DNA of 64,000 bases from Salpingoeca rosetta. Lineage: Eukaryota > Protista > Choanoflagellata. Location: positions 593,497 to 657,496 of the forward strand of contig JAWQFM010000031.1 of the NCBI GenBank assembly GCA_033442325.1, given 5' to 3'. A program made the translations under genes and the position numbers. This document shows positions 13,758 through 61,485 of the stretch, in pieces; the stretch's first letter is position 1; each line of letters begins with the position of its first letter. The notes below the pieces were generated by a model, which saw only the letters and a program-made list of their open reading frames with translations, was not told the origin of the DNA and did not search any database.

Positions 13758-14071
13758 CGCAACTGTCTGTGAGATGTTTTGTGTGACACAGCATTTGTGA
13801 CAACCCTCCCAGCCAGAGACAGAGAGCCAGACAGCCCTAGCCAGTGTCTGTCTGCCGTTGCATTTTCCCCCGTTCATCATTCCCGAAGTTCCTGAGGTGC
13901 AGCCAGTGTTAGTGTTCTCCCATCCTCCCTCCCCCCCTCATCTCTACCTGCAGGCGAGCAAGCACAAGCAGACTCAGCTCTGCTTTACACCTTTTCATCT
14001 GTTTATCTCTCCGCCCTCCCTCCTCAACACCCCCACCAGTCGCAGTTGACCACTTGAAAGCTTGCTTGAGG

Positions 14072-17009
14072 ATGGACCGAAACCGCGGATTTGATGTGTT
14101 CATTTCAGCACATCGAGAGGCCATGGGTGAGGCTTTGGCGCTCAGGGACAGACTTCGGAACGTCCAGCTTCTCGGCGAACAACGGGGTGCTCCAACCGTG
14201 TTCTTGCGCGACGAACGCATGGGCGAAGAAATAATGGAAGGCGCACTCCGCAACTGTTCGCTCGTGGTGGTGCTCGCGTCCTCCAGCTATGGCACAGGAC
14301 AAGAGCAAGGTGACCTGCGATATGTGCTGAGCGAAGGCAAGCCGTTTCTCGCGGTCAAGCGGGACGACCAGCTCCAAGTGGAGTGGGTGCAGAACGCTCT
14401 CAACGGTACCAACTGGCTGTCGTGGTTTGAGGAACGCGAACAACAGCCGCAGCCGCAGCCGCAGCACCAGCGGTTTGCTCGCATCGAGGTTCGCTGGCAG
14501 ATATTGCGCCGCATTCGAGACACGCTTGAGGTTCGTGTGATTGTCATGGTGGTGTGTTGTGGTTTGTTGTTGCACAGTGCCTTTCTGTGTGCCTCAGTTC
14601 GCGCTGTCTTGGTCTTGCTGTTCTTGTTGTCCTAATCGTCGTCTGGTTGCAGGCAGTTTTGCACTGCGTGCTTGTGCCAGCCGAACGCACTCAACACACA
14701 ACTCTGTGACTTCCTGCGTGCTCTACTTGCTCGTGTTTCCCTTTGGATTTACGTGGACAGGCGCTGCAACAGCGAGCACCCGATGAAGAACACCCGCGTC
14801 AGCCCTGGCTCGCGAGGACAGTTCTTTTGGCGCTGGCTATCGTGATTCTTGGCCAAGCCATCTTCGGCGTGACCCAGCAATCGCTCCTGGGGCAAGTTGG
14901 TGAATCAGGTCACGGTTGGACCAACCTTCAGGTGTTTCAGCGCTTGGACGCGATTGAAAGGCGGCTGGAACACCTGGAATACGTTGACGAACGCCTCTCG
15001 GATGTTGAGGTCGCACTCATAGACATGGAAGAAGTCATGGACCGAGTGCGAAAATTGGAGAAAGGCGCGCACGCGTGGATGGCTGTGGAAGACATGGAGC
15101 AGCGGATGCGTTCCCTTGAAGAGGGATTCCAAGATCAAACGCACCTGCGAGACATGGTGCACCGTGTGAATGCACTTGAAGGACAGATGCGCGCTTGCAC
15201 GGCTGTTCAAGACGTCGAGAAGCGAGTGCGCAAATTAGAGAAACAAATGAAGTCGCGTTCAACCGTCGACTGTGACACGCAGGATACAGACGAGGATGTT
15301 GTCGGACAACTCGTCACCCTCGAAGTGCAAATGGCGACACTCGAAGACCGCACCAGCACGCTGGAAGAACACGATGAAGCTCTTGCCTCACTTCGAGAAC
15401 AGCTTCATGGATGCGAACAGCTGGGCGACGTGGTTGCAGATCAGGCCGGAACTTGCTACTTTGACAGTGGCTCATGCCCGCCGCTGAATGTTGAGCCAGA
15501 CGTGATTGTCGAATATCCACACGGCGAACAAGTGTCAACAGCCCTCTGGGGGTGGGAAGTGATGGTTTGGCACCCTTCTGGAGGTGCTGTTGCTGCGGCT
15601 CTACAATCTCCCGGCATTGTGCTTCGTTTCCATTGTTCCAGGGACCACTACGTGTCAGGCCATATCTCAACTACATGTACGTGATTTAGAGTGGTGGGGT
15701 GAAACCTGTCGTGTTGGCTCTACATGCTGGGTGGCAGGGTTGAGTGCGTACATCGCGTGTCTCTGATTGTCACTCACGCTGCGCTGTTTTTCATGTAGGT
15801 CTGCGCTCTCTGCAGTGGAGTCACCAACCACCAAAATGTATTCCGCTGACAAACTGCCGTCCCTCTGAATACGTGGAGGCGCCAGCTTCAGAATCAACTG
15901 ATCGCATTTGCGCCACGTGCCCGCCGGGTACATTCAGTGACTCAGAAAACGCCGCCAAATGCTCAGTGGTCCGCAGATGTAGCCCTGGTGAATACATGTT
16001 ACGCGAGGCAACCCCCACGTCAAATCGTGAATGCAAGCAGTGCACAACCCGAGCAGAAACAATTACACGCCCACTGGGCACTAAGCCTGAAACTGACGTG
16101 GATGACTGGGCTGACCTTGTTCTTGCTGCCAACGGAGTGTTTTACGGTATTCCGGCGCACGCAACATCCGTACTCGCCTACAACCCAAACGGCACAGTTC
16201 ATGCCGAAATTGACGTGAGTTTCTATGGCGATAGTTGGAAGTGGAGTGCAGGCGTTCTTGCTGATGGCCTCATCTTTGGCATTCCGTACGACGCTGCGGC
16301 GGTTCTGGTCATCCACCCAAGCAGTGATAGCATTAGTGACATCAGCGTTGAATGCGGAAGGACGGCGTGTTGGAAAGGTGGCGCACTCGCCGGCAATGGC
16401 AAAATTTATGCTACGCCTCACCATGCGGATGAAGTCCTGATCATTGATCCGGTTGCCCTGACTGTGGATACCACAACTATCATCGGTCTTGGTCTTGGGT
16501 GGAAATGGGCTGGTGCTACGCTGGCACAGGATGGCCGAATTTACTGCGCACCCTTTGATCGTGGCAGTTTGCTCGTGATTGACCCGACGACTAACACAGC
16601 CGAAGAATGGGGTGTCATGGTCCTCGACACAAACGCAGCAGCATTCAGTGACATAATCACTGCGGCAAACGGATTGTTGTTCGCGATTCCTTTCAACGCG
16701 CGGTTTGTTGCTGTCGCTGATCCAAAGACAAGGGATTTCGCGGGCATATCTGGACTGTCATGGGACGGATCGAAATGGGGTGCGGCGAGGCTTGATCGGT
16801 TTGGGCGCATCGTTGCAATGCCATACCGAGCCAACAGCGTGCTCCTCATCGATCCTGACACCGGGACAATTGCATACAATTCCACAACAACGAATGGCTG
16901 CCTAGGTGCTGCCACGACTCGCGATGGTATTGTTCACTGCATCCCAAATCACACGCAGGATGCAATGCTGTTGGTTGACTACCCATGCGACTCAAGGAAG
17001 AAGCCATAA
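14072..17009 (+). CDS. Type II membrane protein: TIR-like domain, TM, coiled coil, Sushi/CCP, TNFR-like Cys repeats, beta-propeller repeats
   Basis: Exons 14072-14530, 14761-15676 and 15799-17009 join in frame. TIR motifs: FDVFISAH...ALRNCSLVVVLASSSYG...DLRYVLSEGKPFLAVK. Hydrophobic segment TVLLALAIVILGQAIFGV. Heptad stalk (RLDAIERRLEHLE, RVRKLEK, RVNALEG). Sushi: CPPL...LRFHCSRDHYVSGHISTTCLRSLQWSHQPPKC, completed across intron 2. TNFR-like: C..SEYVEAPASESTDRICATCPPGTFSDSENAAKC...TPTSNRECKQC. Six to seven blades of W.GG.LA.NGKIY.IP.....VL.IDP. Confidence 0.85.
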
Positions 17010-17269: not shown

Positions 17270-18439
17270 TCACGGCATTGCGGAGTTTGTTCTGCGGACG
17301 GGCATGGCTGCGCCCTCCATCATCTCCACGCGTCGCTGCTCCTCCCGTGTCGACGGCATCCGTGTCGCCCCTGTCGAAGTCGCTGTTGCTGCTGATGACG
17401 ACGATGACGCGAGCAGGGCGGAGAGCACATATGGGCGGACGGAGGATGTGCGTCCCTGCAAGCTCTCCTCGCGCTCAGACTGCCGACAGCTGTCGAAGCG
17501 GCACAGGTGCTCAATCTCCTTGTCCACCACGTGCGGCGTGTAGTTGAGGTGATGGCGGTGGTCGTGACGGTCGTGGCGAGATGTGCTGCGGTGGCGGCTG
17601 CGGTGGCGGCTGCGGCTGCGACCACGCACTTCAGCACCAGCACCAGATGGTGCAGTGGTGGTCTGCGCATCATCATCGTTCCCCACGCTGTTCGCCTTGT
17701 TCATGGTATGGCTGTCATCATCACCCTCCTGCCCGTCCTCCTCTTCCCCCTTCTCCTCCCTCTGCATCAATGCCCTCTCCTTCTCGCGTTCCTCCAGCCG
17801 GTGCAGGTTGAAGTATTCCCGCACGTGCGCCAGCGCAGCGTCGGGCGCGTCCTTCTTGCGGATAAACGTCATCAGGTACCCTTGCAGCTGTTGTGTGTGT
17901 GTGTGAGTGAGTGAGTGAGGTGTGTGTGTGTGTGTGATGTGAGTGTGTGTGATGTGGGTGTGTGTGTGAGTATGTGATGTGAGTGTGCGTGTATTCGGGG
18001 AAGGGTTGCATTGTGATGTTGTTGCGCGAGTGTGGACACACAAACTACACCACTGACACCACGGACACACCTCATCATCACACGATCACAATCACCACAC
18101 CACCACGACTGACCTGGGCCACGCTGAAGGTGTCGTTGTCTGGGAAGTTGTCTGCGAATGCGGTGGCGTCCTTCAGCAGCAAATCACGATCAACGTCATC
18201 ACCACCAGCACCACTACTGCTGCCACCACGCGCGTATTTGGGGTCGTCCTCGAAGAAGCGGGCAAACAGGCCGATAATCTGTTGCCTGCAGGCATGGAAG
18301 AAGCCAAACTCGCGGTCAATGCGGCCGGGCCGGATCAACGCCGGGTCGAGGCGCTCCCTGCGGACATGTGGTGGTGGGGGAGGGGAGTGAGTGATGTGAC
18401 GGTTGTGTGGTTGAAAGGGTGGGCAGCAAGCACCCAAAT

Positions 18440-18516
<77 letters not shown>

Positions 18517-18711
18517 GCACACCTGTGGTTTGTGGTCATGAAGACGATCCTGCCCTCCTGCGCCGCCACGCCGTCAAGAGCATTCAGCAGCCCGTTGAAC
18601 GTCACCTGGAACGGCGTGCGTGGTTGGTGGTTAGTGGGAATGGTTGAAGCGGATGCGGGTAAGTACAAGGCATACAGGACGACAGCACGGTGAGAGAGGC
18701 ATTGAAGCTGT

Positions 18712-18749
<38 letters not shown>

Positions 18750-19799
18750 CCACACAACATACACCCACACAACACACACACACACACACACACAACATAC
18801 ACCCACACAACACACACACACACACACACACACACACCTTCTGCAGAGGCTTGCGGTAGACGGGCTTGTTCTCATCATCATCTCCGCCACTGCTAGTGCT
18901 GGTCCCACCCTTTGTCACCTGCTCCTCCTCATCGTCATCATCGTCACTGCTCTCATCATCACCCTGACTCTTCTTGTCATCCCCCTTCTTGTCCTTCTTC
19001 TTCTTCTTCGTCATATCCACACCATCCTCCTCCTCCTCCTCCTCATCATCGCCATCATCGCCATCATCATCATCACCACCCTTCTTCCCATCACCATCAT
19101 CACCAGTCTGCTGCTGCTGCTGTTTGCGCTTTGACTGCTTGAGTGGCCCGAATGCGGTGTCGATTTCCTCAAACAGGAGGATGGAGGGCGATGGCGCGGA
19201 GTTGAGCATGTAGATGAGGTGCGAATCGTCCATGTCCTCGTCCTGCAGGTTCACCGTGCACACGGGCAGGTCTGTGGCCGTGGTGGTGGTGGTGGTGGTG
19301 AGGAGGTTGGACAGGGGGGGGGGAGATGCGTATGAATGAGAAGTAAGAACGAATGCGAAAACGAAAAGCAGTGACGTGTGGTGAGTAAGCTGGCAACGAA
19401 ACACACACACACAGACACACACACACACACAGACACAGACAGACACAGACACAGACACAGACATATACACACAGACACACACACACACAGACACAAATAA
19501 TTGACGCACTGAATTTGCCAGCGAGGGCGAAGATGAGGCTGCTCTTGCCTGATCCCGGTTTACCGTACAGCAGGTACCCGCGGCGATGGGGCAGCCCTGC
19601 ACCAGGCGAGGTGGACATGTGTGTGGGGGTGTGTGGGGGTGTCGTGAGGGGTTGGTTTGTGCAACGAGGAGGGGGATTACCGTGTGGCATATCTATCCAG
19701 AGTACAAGGAGAATAAATTGAGTGATGTGATGAGACTTGATCGCATGTCACACACACTGACAGAGAGACAGACACAGACGGAGAGACAGACAGACACAG

Positions 19800-57927: not shown

Positions 57928-58592
57928 NNNNNNNNNNNNNNNNNNNNNNNNNNNNNNNNNNNNNNNNNNNNNNNNNNNNNNNNNNNNNNNNNNNNNNNNN
58001 NNNNNNNNNNNNNNNNNNNNNNNNNNNNNNNNNNNNNNNNNNNNNNNNNNNNNNNNNNNNNNNNNNNNNNNNNNNNNNNNNNNNNNNNNNNNNNNNNNNN
58101 NNNNNNNNNNNNNNNNNNNNNNNNNNNNNNNNNNNNNNNNNNNNNNNNNNNNNNNNNNNNNNNNNNNNNNNNNNNNNNNNNNNNNNNNNNNNNNNNNNNN
58201 NNNNNNNNNNNNNNNNNNNNNNNNNNNNNNNNNNNNNNNNNNNNNNNNNNNNNNNNNNNNNNNNNNNNNNNNNNNNNNNNNNNNNNNNNNNNNNNNNNNN
58301 NNNNNNNNNNNNNNNNNNNNNNNNNNNNNNNNNNNNNNNNNNNNNNNNNNNNNNNNNNNNNNNNNNNNNNNNNNNNNNNNNNNNNNNNNNNNNNNNNNNN
58401 NNNNNNNNNNNNNNNNNNNNNNNNNNNNNNNNNNNNNNNNNNNNNNNNNNNNNNNNNNNNNNNNNNNNNNNNNNNNNNNNNNNNNNNNNNNNNNNNNNNN
58501 NNNNNNNNNNNNNNNNNNNNNNNNNNNNNNNNNNNNNNNNNNNNNNNNNNNNNNNNNNNNNNNNNNNNNNNNNNNNNNNNNNNNNNNNNNNN
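57928..58592. other. Assembly gap
   Basis: N run downstream of the SEC14-like exons. Confidence 0.99.

Positions 58593-61485
<2,893 letters not shown>

What the first reader, a model, noticed from the sequence alone, without database searches (positions are those of the whole stretch)
14072..17009. Inverted-topology TIR receptor: cytosolic TIR, TM, coiled-coil stalk, Sushi, TNFR repeats, beta-propeller
Seen: three ORFs in the track join via two in-phase GT-AG introns into one ~860-aa protein with no signal peptide, an N-terminal TIR-like domain, one TM and a scavenger-receptor-like stalk. The Sushi domain only appears after splicing (C...C..HYVSG..TTC...WSHQPPKC), followed by TNFR-type Cys repeats and a propeller head. 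Known: Toll-like and IL-1 receptors are type I with a C-terminal TIR; TIR, CCP and TNFR are all animal immune modules; coiled-coil stalks oligomerise. Inference: a type II pattern-recognition receptor whose head binds a ligand such as a bacterial glycan and whose stalk clusters TIR domains. I know of no described receptor with this architecture.
Basis: partly seen in the sequence, partly recalled or inferred. Interest (0 to 1): 0.85.

Follow-up and report, generated by a model that had tools for sequence, protein, structure and literature searches.

The report
Choanoflagellate membrane protein with inward-facing TIR
This is a real three-exon gene of the choanoflagellate Salpingoeca rosetta (PTSG_09788) encoding a single-pass membrane protein with a TIR-fold domain on the cytosolic N-terminus and a stalk, CCP-like, TNFR and seven-bladed propeller outside, the mirror image of a Toll-like receptor; its function is untested.

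Summary
Joining 14072-14530, 14761-15676 and 15799-17009 (+) through two GT-AG introns gives an 861-aa protein identical to the public Salpingoeca rosetta model PTSG_09788 (XP_004989147.1, UniProt F2UP23). It is listed there only as a hypothetical or TNFR-Cys protein. The window is choanoflagellate DNA, not human.

- **TIR:** residues 6-127 fall below Pfam's TIR_2 cut-off. They match a 28-member N-terminal TIR_2 family (hhalign 98%; HMM 36 bits). The AlphaFold model (pLDDT 80.6) matches almost only TIR structures. The family's invariant catalytic-type Glu is Asp here.
- **Membrane and stalk:** one TM (173-191) has basic residues only on its N side. A 170-residue proline-free, heptad-periodic stalk follows.
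- **CCP/Sushi:** only the C-terminal half is recognisable.
- **TNFR and head:** about 1.5 TNFR repeats and a seven-bladed propeller are strongly supported.

The protein is not unique. PTSG_02868 (TIR-TM-propeller) and PTSG_02597 (TIR-SH2-TM-ectodomain) share the inverted layout. The head belongs to a 151-gene S. rosetta-specific family, and TIR-module genes often lie beside its members.

A receptor role is plausible but untested, and I found no ortholog or published description. I rate it a new variant of a known kind, of moderate to high interest.

The parts
14072..17009 (+). Whole coding region of PTSG_09788 (3 exons, 861 codons plus TAA stop)
   Evidence: The spliced translation is identical to P0001. 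It lies at GL832985.1:607568-610505 of GCA_000188695.1.
14072..14530 (+). Exon 1, aa 1-153: start codon, TIR-fold domain and the start of the juxtamembrane helix
   Evidence: The TIR module also fills its own first exon in the paralogs PTSG_02868 (aa 1-159) and PTSG_02597 (aa 1-148).
14087..14452 (+). TIR-fold domain, aa 6-127. Box 1 is FDVFIS (7-12), the box 2-like motif is RDxxxG (46-51) and the box 3 Trp is W118. Asp81 sits at the position of the family's invariant Glu.
   Evidence: Pfam TIR_2 scores 21 bits, E 4.9e-4, below the cut-off of 28. hhalign against the 28-member family A1 gives 98%, E 1.4e-13. An HMM built from A1 alone scores 36.2 bits, E 5.6e-10. The AF2 model has pLDDT 80.6 with alternating strand/helix order. 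Foldseek's top hits are TIR domains: 8fz9, SARM1, MAL, MyD88, RUN1, TLR1.
14531..14760 (+). Intron 1, 230 nt, GT-AG, phase 0
   Evidence: Reading through it reaches a stop at 14633-14635.
14761..15676 (+). Exon 2, aa 154-458 plus the first base of codon 459
   Evidence: There is no in-frame ATG before the TM segment; the first Met of this exon is residue 241.
14818..14874 (+). Transmembrane segment, aa 173-191
   Evidence: It has the highest Kyte-Doolittle 19-mer score in the protein (2.3). There are 3 K/R in the 15 residues on the N side and none on the C side, which predicts N-in.
14914..15417 (+). Alpha-helical stalk, aa 205-372, with four exact 20-residue repeats starting at aa 244, 264, 284 and 304, and Cys299, Cys324 and Cys371
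   Evidence: The heptad a/d hydrophobicity score is 0.50 against 0.26 +/- 0.04 for shuffles (0 of 300 reach it). There is no Pro in 173 residues. Only weak coiled-coil-type Pfam hits are found.
15475..15839 (+). CCP/Sushi-like module, aa 392-472, spanning intron 2. Its Cys are 392, 445, 459 and 472, and its Trp is 465.
   Evidence: Pfam Sushi scores 22.1 bits against a cut-off of 20.7, covering profile positions 21-56 only, and only on the spliced protein. The PDB sequence search returns almost only CCP modules (CR1, CR2, factor H, MCP, DAF), best E 1.3e-4, over aa 438-476. The AF2 model is not confident here, with pLDDT below 50 for aa 376-470.
15677..15798 (+). Intron 2, 122 nt, GT-AG, phase 1 (splits the Cys459 codon T|GT)
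   Evidence: The other nearby AG (15814-15815) is out of frame.
15799..17009 (+). Exon 3: last two bases of codon 459, aa 460-861 and the stop
15855..16043 (+). TNFR-type cysteine-rich repeats, aa 478-540 (7 Cys, about one and a half repeats)
   Evidence: Pfam TNFR_c6 scores 52.2 bits, E 8e-14. PDB sequence hits include ELR1, HVEM and TNFR2. AF2 pLDDT is above 90.
16056..16988 (+). Seven-bladed beta-propeller head, aa 545-855 (seven repeats of the type xNGxIYxIP......VLxIDP)
   Evidence: The AF2 model has 28 strands, with pLDDT mostly above 90. Best Foldseek hits are streptogramin B lyase 2qc5/2z2p (TM 0.86 on the target), the YVTN propeller 1l0q and the sensor domains BT4673/BT4663. Pfam DUF6923 scores 27.5 bits against a cut-off of 27. 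There are 4731 relatives in the representative library.

Best explanation
PTSG_09788 is a single-pass type II membrane protein of Salpingoeca rosetta.

Shown here:
- It has a cytosolic N-terminal TIR-fold domain, one TM segment and a long proline-free helical stalk.
- Outside the membrane it carries a CCP-like module, TNFR-type cysteine repeats and a seven-bladed propeller.
- The propeller belongs to a 151-gene S. rosetta-specific family whose other inspected members are secreted.

Inferred:
- The stalk makes parallel oligomers that hold the head away from the cell surface.
- Binding of a multivalent extracellular ligand to the propeller/TNFR head brings several molecules together.
- The cytosolic TIR domains then pack against each other and against soluble paralogs that carry the same TIR module (TIR-ARM, TIR-SH2, TIR-PDZ), which pass the signal on.
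- This TIR has Asp where all 28 relatives have the catalytic-type Glu, so I expect it to act as a recruiting scaffold rather than as an NAD-cleaving enzyme.
- The biological setting (sensing bacteria, prey or other cells) is a guess.
For: - **Gene model:** the spliced product is identical to the public RNA-seq-informed model. Exon 2 has no ATG before the TM, so the ectodomain needs exon 1 to be translated. The CCP consensus is created across the exon 2/3 junction.
- **TIR:** searches support it. A profile of the family plus this domain also hits plant TIRs (Roq1, RUN1) and SARM1 by sequence.
- **Topology:** one TM, basic residues on the N side only, and all Cys-rich modules on the C side.
- **Stalk:** heptad periodicity is far above shuffles.
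- **Head:** it is a ligand-binding-type propeller, with fold matches to bacterial periplasmic sensor domains.
- **Same layout in paralogs:** PTSG_02868 is TIR-TM-propeller and PTSG_02597 is TIR-SH2-TM-ectodomain.
- **Link between the two families:** propeller-family genes lie within 10 kb of TIR-module genes at 4 of the 5 unfused loci checked with 10-kb flanks. Two further genes are fusions of the two families.
Against: - No transcript, localisation, ligand or signalling data were available.
- No ortholog of the N-terminal 160 residues or of the TM-stalk-CCP part was found in any other organism. The search was word-seeded and limited to proteins of 473-1507 aa. The gene may therefore be young and lineage-specific.
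- The TIR match of this protein alone is below Pfam's cut-off.
- The catalytic-type Glu is Asp and the loop before it is 5 residues shorter than in all relatives, which could also mean a decaying domain.
- The N-terminal half of the CCP module did not fold confidently.
- The four 20-residue stalk repeats, most with a Gly near position 11-12, could form a helical zigzag rather than a straight coiled coil.
- Three of the four adjacency loci (TIR-ARM plus propeller) look like copies of one duplicated pair, so they are not independent.
Confidence: 0.5

Rival explanations
1. The protein is a membrane-anchored lectin or adhesion protein whose TIR domain is a self-contained NAD-consuming effector, as in SARM1 and the bacterial and plant TIR enzymes. 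Clustering would switch on NAD cleavage or cyclic ADPR-type signal production directly, without adaptor paralogs.
For: The best fold matches include enzymatic TIRs (B. cereus TIR, SARM1, RUN1). The related family keeps an invariant Glu in an EEL motif that lines up with the WCLEEL/DEL catalytic motif of the plant TIRs Roq1 and RUN1. Another S. rosetta TIR (F2UB80) is reported to make cADPR (bioRxiv 10.64898/2026.04.20.719644).
Against: In this protein the aligned residue is Asp81, in both the MAFFT and the hhalign alignment, next to a 5-residue deletion. The cited preprint reports that activity depended on the catalytic glutamate. The tested S. rosetta TIR belongs to a different TIR family and protein.
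Confidence: 0.2
2. It is a structural surface protein (cell coat, theca, cell-cell or cell-substrate adhesion, or prey capture) with no signalling role. The TIR-like domain is a cytoskeletal or trafficking anchor, or a relic.
For: Most members inspected from the 151-gene propeller family are simple secreted proteins. The gene is absent from the two uncut differential-expression tables of PMC4054682 (files 10 and 12). The TIR is the most divergent member of its family, at 25-37% identity against about 50% among the others.
Against: The TIR core motifs and a confident TIR fold are retained. The same module is joined to SH2, ARM and PDZ signalling domains in paralogs. TIR domains are not known as cytoskeletal or trafficking anchors (own knowledge).
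Confidence: 0.18
3. The gene model is a false fusion. Exon 1 would be a separate small TIR-only gene (possibly ending in the hydrophobic read-through of intron 1), and the TM-ectodomain part would be a different gene.
For: I saw no transcript evidence directly. The TIR fills its own exon. Read-through of intron 1 gives an open frame ending 34 codons later (ORF 14054-14635).
Against: Exon 2 has no in-frame start codon upstream of the TM segment and no signal peptide. Both splice sites are canonical and keep the frame. The public model was built with PASA and RNA-seq from eight conditions. Two paralogs have the same TIR-then-TM order. The hydrophobic read-through is what a T/G-rich intron translates to by chance.
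Confidence: 0.07

Closest known systems
Toll-like and IL-1 receptors (animals; TLRs also in 14 of 21 choanoflagellates, PMC6040629)
   Same: A single-pass membrane protein with an extracellular repeat domain and a cytosolic TIR-fold domain. Signalling by induced TIR proximity is the likely logic.
   Different: TLR and IL-1R are type I, with a signal peptide, an LRR or Ig ectodomain and a C-terminal TIR. This protein is type II, with an N-terminal TIR and a stalk/CCP/TNFR/propeller ectodomain. Its TIR belongs to another TIR subfamily (TIR_2/DUF4062-like). MyD88 and IRAK are absent from choanoflagellates.
PTSG_02868 (F2U3K2) and PTSG_02597 of S. rosetta
   Same: Same genome, same N-terminal TIR module encoded by its own first exon, one TM and a C-terminal ectodomain. 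PTSG_02868 also has the same propeller family as its head.
   Different: PTSG_02868 has a Gly/Pro-rich linker instead of the stalk, CCP and TNFR modules, and it keeps the family's Glu. PTSG_02597 has an SH2 domain before the TM and a different ectodomain. TIR identity to PTSG_09788 is only 28-29%.
Class A scavenger receptors and the membrane collectin CL-P1/COLEC12 (own knowledge)
   Same: Type II topology with a short cytosolic N-terminus, a TM, a long helical oligomerising stalk and a C-terminal ligand-binding head. This is the best analogue for how the ectodomain is built.
   Different: Those receptors have collagenous segments and SRCR or C-type lectin heads and no TIR domain. There is no sequence relationship.
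SARM1 and other ARM-TIR proteins
   Same: TIR fold (Foldseek hits). The S. rosetta paralogs PTSG_10764, PTSG_10776 and PTSG_09915 combine ARM repeats with this TIR module.
   Different: SARM1 is soluble or mitochondrion-associated, with ARM-SAM-TIR order and a catalytic Glu. PTSG_09788 is membrane-spanning and has Asp at that position.
TNF receptor superfamily
   Same: TNFR_c6 cysteine-rich repeats above Pfam's threshold.
   Different: TNFRs are type I with 1-6 repeats as the whole ligand-binding part, plus death or TRAF-binding tails. Here about 1.5 repeats sit between a CCP-like module and a propeller in a type II protein.
Vgb (streptogramin B lyase) / YVTN-type seven-bladed propellers and Bacteroides hybrid two-component sensor domains
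   Same: Best structural matches of the head (TM 0.83-0.87 on the target for Vgb). The repeat family is shared with many bacterial surface proteins.
   Different: Sequence identity is only 11-16%. Lyase active-site residues were not assessed. Here the propeller is the head of a eukaryotic membrane protein.

Membership tests
TIR domain superfamily | Match to a curated TIR profile above its gathering score | tested here: not met
   TIR_2 scores 21 bits against a cut-off of 28 for exon 1 alone, and is not listed at E <= 0.01 on the full protein. The paralog PTSG_02868 domain reaches 29.7 bits, and 27 of 28 family members hit TIR_2 at E <= 0.01.
TIR domain superfamily | Homology to bona fide TIR-family sequences by profile methods | tested here: met
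   hhalign against family A1 gives 98% probability, E 1.4e-13. An A1-only HMM scores 36.2 bits, E 5.6e-10. A profile of the family plus this domain hits Roq1, RPV1, RUN1 and SARM1 TIR chains.
TIR domain superfamily | Flavodoxin-like alternating strand/helix fold that superposes on solved TIR domains | tested here: met
   The AF2 model has pLDDT 80.6 and pTM 0.78, with strands 7-13, 43-45, 62-69, 92-96 and 115-117 alternating with helices. In Foldseek, 8 of the 9 hits with E <= 0.001 and most of the top 50 are TIR domains, with TM 0.5-0.7.
Enzymatic (NAD-cleaving) TIR domains | Catalytic glutamate at the start of helix alpha-C | tested here: not met
   All 28 relatives have Glu in the motif FSTFEEL. 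PTSG_09788 has Asp81 at the aligned position, after a 5-residue deletion, in both alignments. Glu78 lies one helical turn earlier and cannot be excluded without a structure-based superposition.
Toll-like receptor | Signal peptide, LRR ectodomain, TM, then C-terminal TIR (type I) | tested here: not met
   There is no signal peptide and no LRR. The TIR is N-terminal and the TM follows it.
Type II single-pass membrane protein | One TM and no cleavable signal peptide, with the N-terminus cytosolic | tested here: inconclusive
   One hydrophobic 19-mer lies at 173-191, the N-terminus is hydrophilic, and K/R counts are 3 on the N side and 0 on the C side. All disulfide-type modules are C-terminal. 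No dedicated topology predictor or experiment was available.
CCP / Sushi module | About 60 residues with four Cys (I-III, II-IV) and a conserved Trp before Cys IV | tested here: inconclusive
   The C-terminal half fits: Pfam scores 22.1 against 20.7, covering profile positions 21-56, and hits in the PDB are almost all CCP modules. The spacing from Cys I to Cys II is 53 residues, about twice the usual, and AF2 does not fold aa 376-470 (pLDDT below 50).
TNFR cysteine-rich domain | TNFR_c6 profile above the gathering score | tested here: met
   It scores 52.2 bits against 29.4. PDB hits are to TNFR-family ectodomains, and pLDDT is above 90.
Seven-bladed beta-propeller (Vgb/YVTN-like; Pfam DUF6923/DUF5074 repeats) | Seven four-stranded blades | tested here: met
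   The model has 28 strands. The TM-score is 0.86 to streptogramin B lyase. DUF6923 scores 27.5 bits against a cut-off of 27.
Coiled-coil stalk | Heptad periodicity over a long proline-free helix, and oligomer formation | tested here: inconclusive
   Heptad periodicity is far above shuffles and there is no Pro.

The most novel reading that the evidence does not exclude
S. rosetta has its own expanded surface-recognition system, built independently of TLRs. It would consist of a 151-gene family of neck-plus-propeller proteins, mostly secreted, with a few anchored in the membrane and fused to a cytosolic N-terminal TIR module (PTSG_09788, PTSG_02868). These would work together with soluble TIR-ARM, TIR-SH2 and TIR-PDZ paralogs that are often encoded next to propeller genes. 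[quoted passage not shown]
Probability: 0.25. Interest if true: 0.85.

Novelty: new variant of a known kind. Interest (0 to 1): 0.6.

Why it matters
TIR domains are the common currency of innate immunity in bacteria, plants and animals, and choanoflagellates are the reference point for what existed before animals. Published work on choanoflagellate TIR proteins covers canonical TLRs, 'Kinase TLRs', 'Kinase TIRs', SARM1 and soluble TIR proteins with Ank, Arm or SH2 domains (PMC6040629). I found no description of a membrane protein with the TIR on a cytosolic N-terminus and the sensor part at the C-terminus.

If this protein signals, coupling an extracellular sensor to a TIR domain would have arisen more than once, in both orientations. 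S. rosetta also responds to specific bacterial cues whose receptors are unknown (own knowledge) and can be transfected and edited, so the idea is directly testable. The 151-gene, species-specific propeller family and its genomic association with TIR-module genes resemble the lineage-specific receptor expansions seen in invertebrate immune systems.

Tried and rejected
- **Orthologs of the TIR part:** a search with residues 1-160 of the full protein among 473-1507-aa proteins found only the protein itself.
- **Orthologs of the TM-stalk-CCP part:** a search with residues 150-480 also found only the protein itself. Both searches are word-seeded and length-limited, so distant or fragmentary relatives could be missed.
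- **PDB sequence search with exon 1 alone:** only a chance RecF match at E 0.11.
- **Rfam scan of the window:** nothing found.
- **Stalk versus paralog neck:** I tested whether the stalk is homologous to the short helical neck of the secreted propeller paralogs, and found no significant match.
- **Expression data:** PTSG_09788 appears only in the OrthoMCL table of PMC4054682. The FPKM table is truncated in the held copy. The gene is absent from the two complete differential-expression tables.
- **Literature:** searches for gene and protein identifiers and for type II or N-terminal TIR membrane receptors found no description. The gene is not in the TIR set of the 2026 preprint on catalytic TIRs.
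- **Alternative acceptor for intron 2 (AG at 15814-15815):** rejected because it is out of frame.
- **Human origin:** rejected. The contig is S. rosetta GL832985.1.
- **Bacterial origin of the head by horizontal transfer:** considered but not pursued. Many top propeller hits are bacterial or metagenomic, but multi-propeller proteins inflate those scores and no tree was built.
Full report
**What the window is.** The window has about 55% G+C and very many (CA)n/(TG)n microsatellites, and its genes have short GT-AG introns. The protein encoded by the finding is identical to a protein of Salpingoeca rosetta ATCC 50818. Its identifiers are PTSG_09788, EGD79378.1 / XP_004989147.1 and UniProt F2UP23, and it is named only 'hypothetical protein' or 'TNFR-Cys domain-containing protein'. 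The locus is GL832985.1:607568-610505 of assembly GCA_000188695.1. Its neighbours include protein kinases, SSNA1 and a Vps35-like gene. This is choanoflagellate DNA, not human, so the operators' restriction on human contigs does not apply.

**Checking the observation.** Three open frames (14054-14635, 14743-15684, 15744-17009) are present.
- Splicing 14530|14761 (GAG|GTTCGT ... GGACAG|GCG, 230 nt, phase 0) and 15676|15799 (ACAT|GTACGT ... CATGTAG|GT, 122 nt, phase 1) gives a 2586-nt coding sequence of 861 codons.
- The translation equals the database protein letter for letter.
- The published annotation combined ab initio predictors, EVM, PASA and RNA-seq from eight conditions (PMC4054682). 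I could not see read-level support for this particular gene.
- Two internal arguments support the joins. Exon 2 has no in-frame ATG upstream of the membrane segment (its first Met is residue 241), so the ectodomain cannot be translated without exon 1. The CCP consensus (...C..x..G....TC.....WS..PP.C) is completed only across the exon 2/3 junction, where Cys459 is encoded by T|GT.
- Pfam finds Sushi on the spliced protein (22.1 bits, cut-off 20.7) but not on the separate exons.

**The N-terminal domain.**
- Alone it scores 21 bits on Pfam TIR_2 (cut-off 28) and 14 bits on DUF4062. A PDB sequence search finds nothing meaningful. On that evidence the TIR call would be only a lead.
- Among the 150 best relatives of the propeller, one protein, P0047, also matched the N-terminal part. 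P0047 is PTSG_02868 of S. rosetta, a 'TIR domain-containing protein'. Identity is 29% over 128 residues.
- Searching with its first 250 residues found 27 further proteins that carry the same module.
- In S. rosetta these are PTSG_02597, PTSG_05359, PTSG_10764, PTSG_09915, PTSG_10776 and PTSG_06434.
- In metagenomes and protist transcriptomes the module is joined to WD40, MORN, Sel1 or Ank repeats.
- Of the 28 modules, 27 hit TIR_2, 16 hit DUF4062 and 13 hit TIR.
- A profile of these 28 (A1, without the query) matches PTSG_09788 residues 4-121 with 98% probability, E 1.4e-13. An HMM built from A1 scores the exon 1 frame at 36.2 bits, E 5.6e-10.
- An AlphaFold model of residues 1-160, using this alignment, has mean pLDDT 80.6 and pTM 0.78, with five strands alternating with helices.
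- Foldseek against the PDB returns TIR domains almost exclusively: B. cereus TIR 8fz9, SARM1, MAL, MyD88, RUN1, TLR1, TRIF, Hydra TRR-2, RPP1.
The domain is a TIR.
- The three classical boxes are visible: FDVFIS (7-12), RDxxxG (46-51) and Trp118.
- One feature departs from the family. All 28 relatives have the invariant motif FSTFEEL, whose second Glu lines up with the catalytic Glu of the plant TIRs Roq1 and RUN1 (WCLEEL/DEL; and own knowledge). PTSG_09788 lacks five residues there and has Asp81 at that position, in both the MAFFT and the hhalign alignments.

**Membrane segment and topology.** The only strongly hydrophobic 19-mer is 173-191. The N-terminus is hydrophilic. There are three Arg or Lys in the 15 residues before the segment and none in the 15 after it. 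All cysteine-rich modules and three of the five N-x-S/T sites lie C-terminal. This predicts a type II protein with the N-terminus inside. It remains a prediction, because no dedicated topology tool or experiment was available.

**The stalk.** Residues 200-372 contain no proline, are rich in Glu, Asp, Arg, Leu and Val, and show heptad a/d hydrophobic periodicity of 0.50. Composition-matched shuffles give 0.26 +/- 0.04, and none of 300 reaches the observed value. Four exact 20-residue repeats ([DE][VM]xxR[VM][RN]xLE...) start at residues 244, 264, 284 and 304. Three cysteines (299, 324, 371) could link chains. A parallel coiled coil is the simplest reading. The 20-residue period and the glycines near position 11-12 of most repeats leave room for a segmented helical bundle.

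**CCP, TNFR and propeller.**
- Residues 438-476 hit almost only CCP modules in the PDB: complement receptors 1 and 2, factor H, MCP, DAF and beta2-glycoprotein I, with best E 1.3e-4.
- The first half of the module is atypical, with 53 residues between Cys392 and Cys445. AlphaFold did not fold residues 376-470 (pLDDT below 50). I therefore call it CCP-like, with only the C-terminal half established.
- The TNFR repeats (478-540, seven Cys) are solid. Pfam gives 52 bits, PDB hits are to ELR1, HVEM and TNFR2, and pLDDT is above 90.
- The head (545-855) folds into 28 strands, which is seven blades. It superposes best on streptogramin B lyase (TM 0.86). Next come an archaeal YVTN propeller and the periplasmic sensor domains of Bacteroides hybrid two-component systems.

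**Relatives and context.**
- The representative library holds 4731 relatives of the TNFR-plus-propeller part (exon 3). Many are bacterial or metagenomic multi-domain surface proteins.
- No protein other than PTSG_09788 itself shares the TM-stalk-CCP part or the exact architecture.
- In the OrthoMCL table of the genome paper, PTSG_09788 and PTSG_02868 sit in cluster OMG10072. I counted 151 S. rosetta genes, 3 from Emiliania huxleyi and 1 from Thalassiosira pseudonana, and none from Monosiga brevicollis or animals. The main text of that paper does not mention propellers or TIR.
- The three cleanly translated members I inspected are about 425-445-aa secreted proteins, each with a signal peptide, a short helical neck and a propeller.
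- PTSG_02868 has a TIR (21-140), a TM (about 220-243), a Gly/Pro-rich linker and then the propeller.
- PTSG_02597 has a TIR, an SH2 domain, a TM (about 415) and an ectodomain. PTSG_05359 has a TIR, an SH2 domain and a four-TM LHFPL/claudin-like domain. PTSG_10764, PTSG_10776 and PTSG_09915 are TIR-ARM, and PTSG_06434 is TIR-PDZ.
- In the three single-pass membrane proteins (PTSG_09788, PTSG_02868, PTSG_02597) the TIR module fills the first exon, with an intron right after it. This fits assembly by exon shuffling.
- Propeller-family genes lie within 10 kb of the TIR-module gene at four of the five unfused loci I fetched with 10-kb flanks. They flank PTSG_10764 on both sides, two lie downstream of PTSG_09915, one lies 4.5 kb from PTSG_05359, and a fragment plus one gene lie upstream of PTSG_10776. 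None lies near PTSG_06434. PTSG_02597 is three gene numbers from PTSG_02600, another cluster member.
- With 151 genes in 55 Mb, a random 20-kb window would hold one about 5% of the time. However, the three TIR-ARM loci look like copies of one duplicated pair and the family is itself clustered, so the number of independent events is small.

**How it most likely works.** Shown: the parts, their order and the predicted orientation. Inferred: the stalk oligomerises and displays the head, a multivalent ligand clusters the molecules, and the cytosolic TIR domains then assemble. All well-studied TIR signalling depends on such assembly (own knowledge). Because the catalytic-type Glu is replaced, I favour a scaffold that recruits the Glu-bearing soluble paralogs over a self-sufficient NADase. 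I give the receptor-scaffold model 0.5, the direct-enzyme variant 0.2, a non-signalling structural role 0.18 and a false gene fusion 0.07. MyD88 and IRAK are absent from choanoflagellates (PMC6040629), so the downstream route would not be the animal TLR pathway.

**Comparison with what is known.** By function it resembles a TLR turned around. By ectodomain construction it resembles type II scavenger receptors and the membrane collectin CL-P1. It is not a TLR, an IL-1R or a TNFR-superfamily member, because the defining topology and ectodomain features were tested and not met. It is a member of the TIR superfamily on profile and fold evidence, but not, on present evidence, of the catalytic TIRs. 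A 2026 preprint reports cADPR production by another S. rosetta TIR (F2UB80). That is a different protein and TIR family, and PTSG_09788 and PTSG_02868 are not in its tables.

**Verdict.** The finding is real and correctly described. The gene is already in public databases as an uncharacterised protein whose TIR domain is not annotated. I found no publication describing the inverted TIR-receptor layout, and at least three S. rosetta genes share it. I rate it a new variant of a known kind, with interest 0.6.

Noticed in passing
window 38285-53473 (-): A single uninterrupted 5062-codon open frame sits in a 63% G+C block that stands out from the 53-55% surroundings. Its C-terminal half carries Big_9 (140 bits) and bacterial cadherin-like domains, and its N-terminal half has no Pfam match. 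It is probably a giant intronless surface or adhesion protein gene.
   Followed up: partly
Fairclough et al. 2013 (PMC4054682), Additional file 3, cluster OMG10072; loci L004, L005, L006, L007: The propeller head belongs to a 151-gene S. rosetta-specific family (plus 3 E. huxleyi and 1 T. pseudonana genes). The members inspected are secreted neck-plus-propeller proteins. Genes for the N-terminal TIR module (TIR-ARM, TIR-SH2-4TM) lie within 10 kb of such genes at four of five loci checked.
   Followed up: partly
L004:10001-11572, L005:10001-11233, L007:10001-11638: Three intronless TIR-ARM genes (PTSG_10764, PTSG_09915, PTSG_10776) have nearly identical N-termini, and each has propeller genes beside it. 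This looks like segmental duplication of a TIR-ARM plus propeller gene pair.
   Followed up: partly
window 14531-14635 (+): Reading exon 1 through intron 1 adds 34 mostly hydrophobic residues before a stop, which would mimic a tail-anchored TIR-only isoform. This is probably a by-product of the T/G-rich intron.
   Followed up: no
window 18078-18908 (-) and 17270-18070 (-): Open frames downstream of the gene on the opposite strand include an AAA-ATPase-like stretch (...LDPALIRPGRIDRE...) interrupted by CA/TG microsatellite introns. They belong to the annotated 851-aa neighbour, and Pfam found nothing on the raw frame.
   Followed up: partly
whole window: The window has an extreme density of (CA)n/(TG)n microsatellites (about 100 runs of 8 or more units in 64 kb), mostly in introns and between genes. 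It also has 1329 N (assembly gaps) and a 37% G+C dip at 58001-60000.
   Followed up: no
window 36158-37198 (+): An open frame with leucine-rich repeats (LRR_4, 36 bits) lies next to the giant ORF.
   Followed up: no
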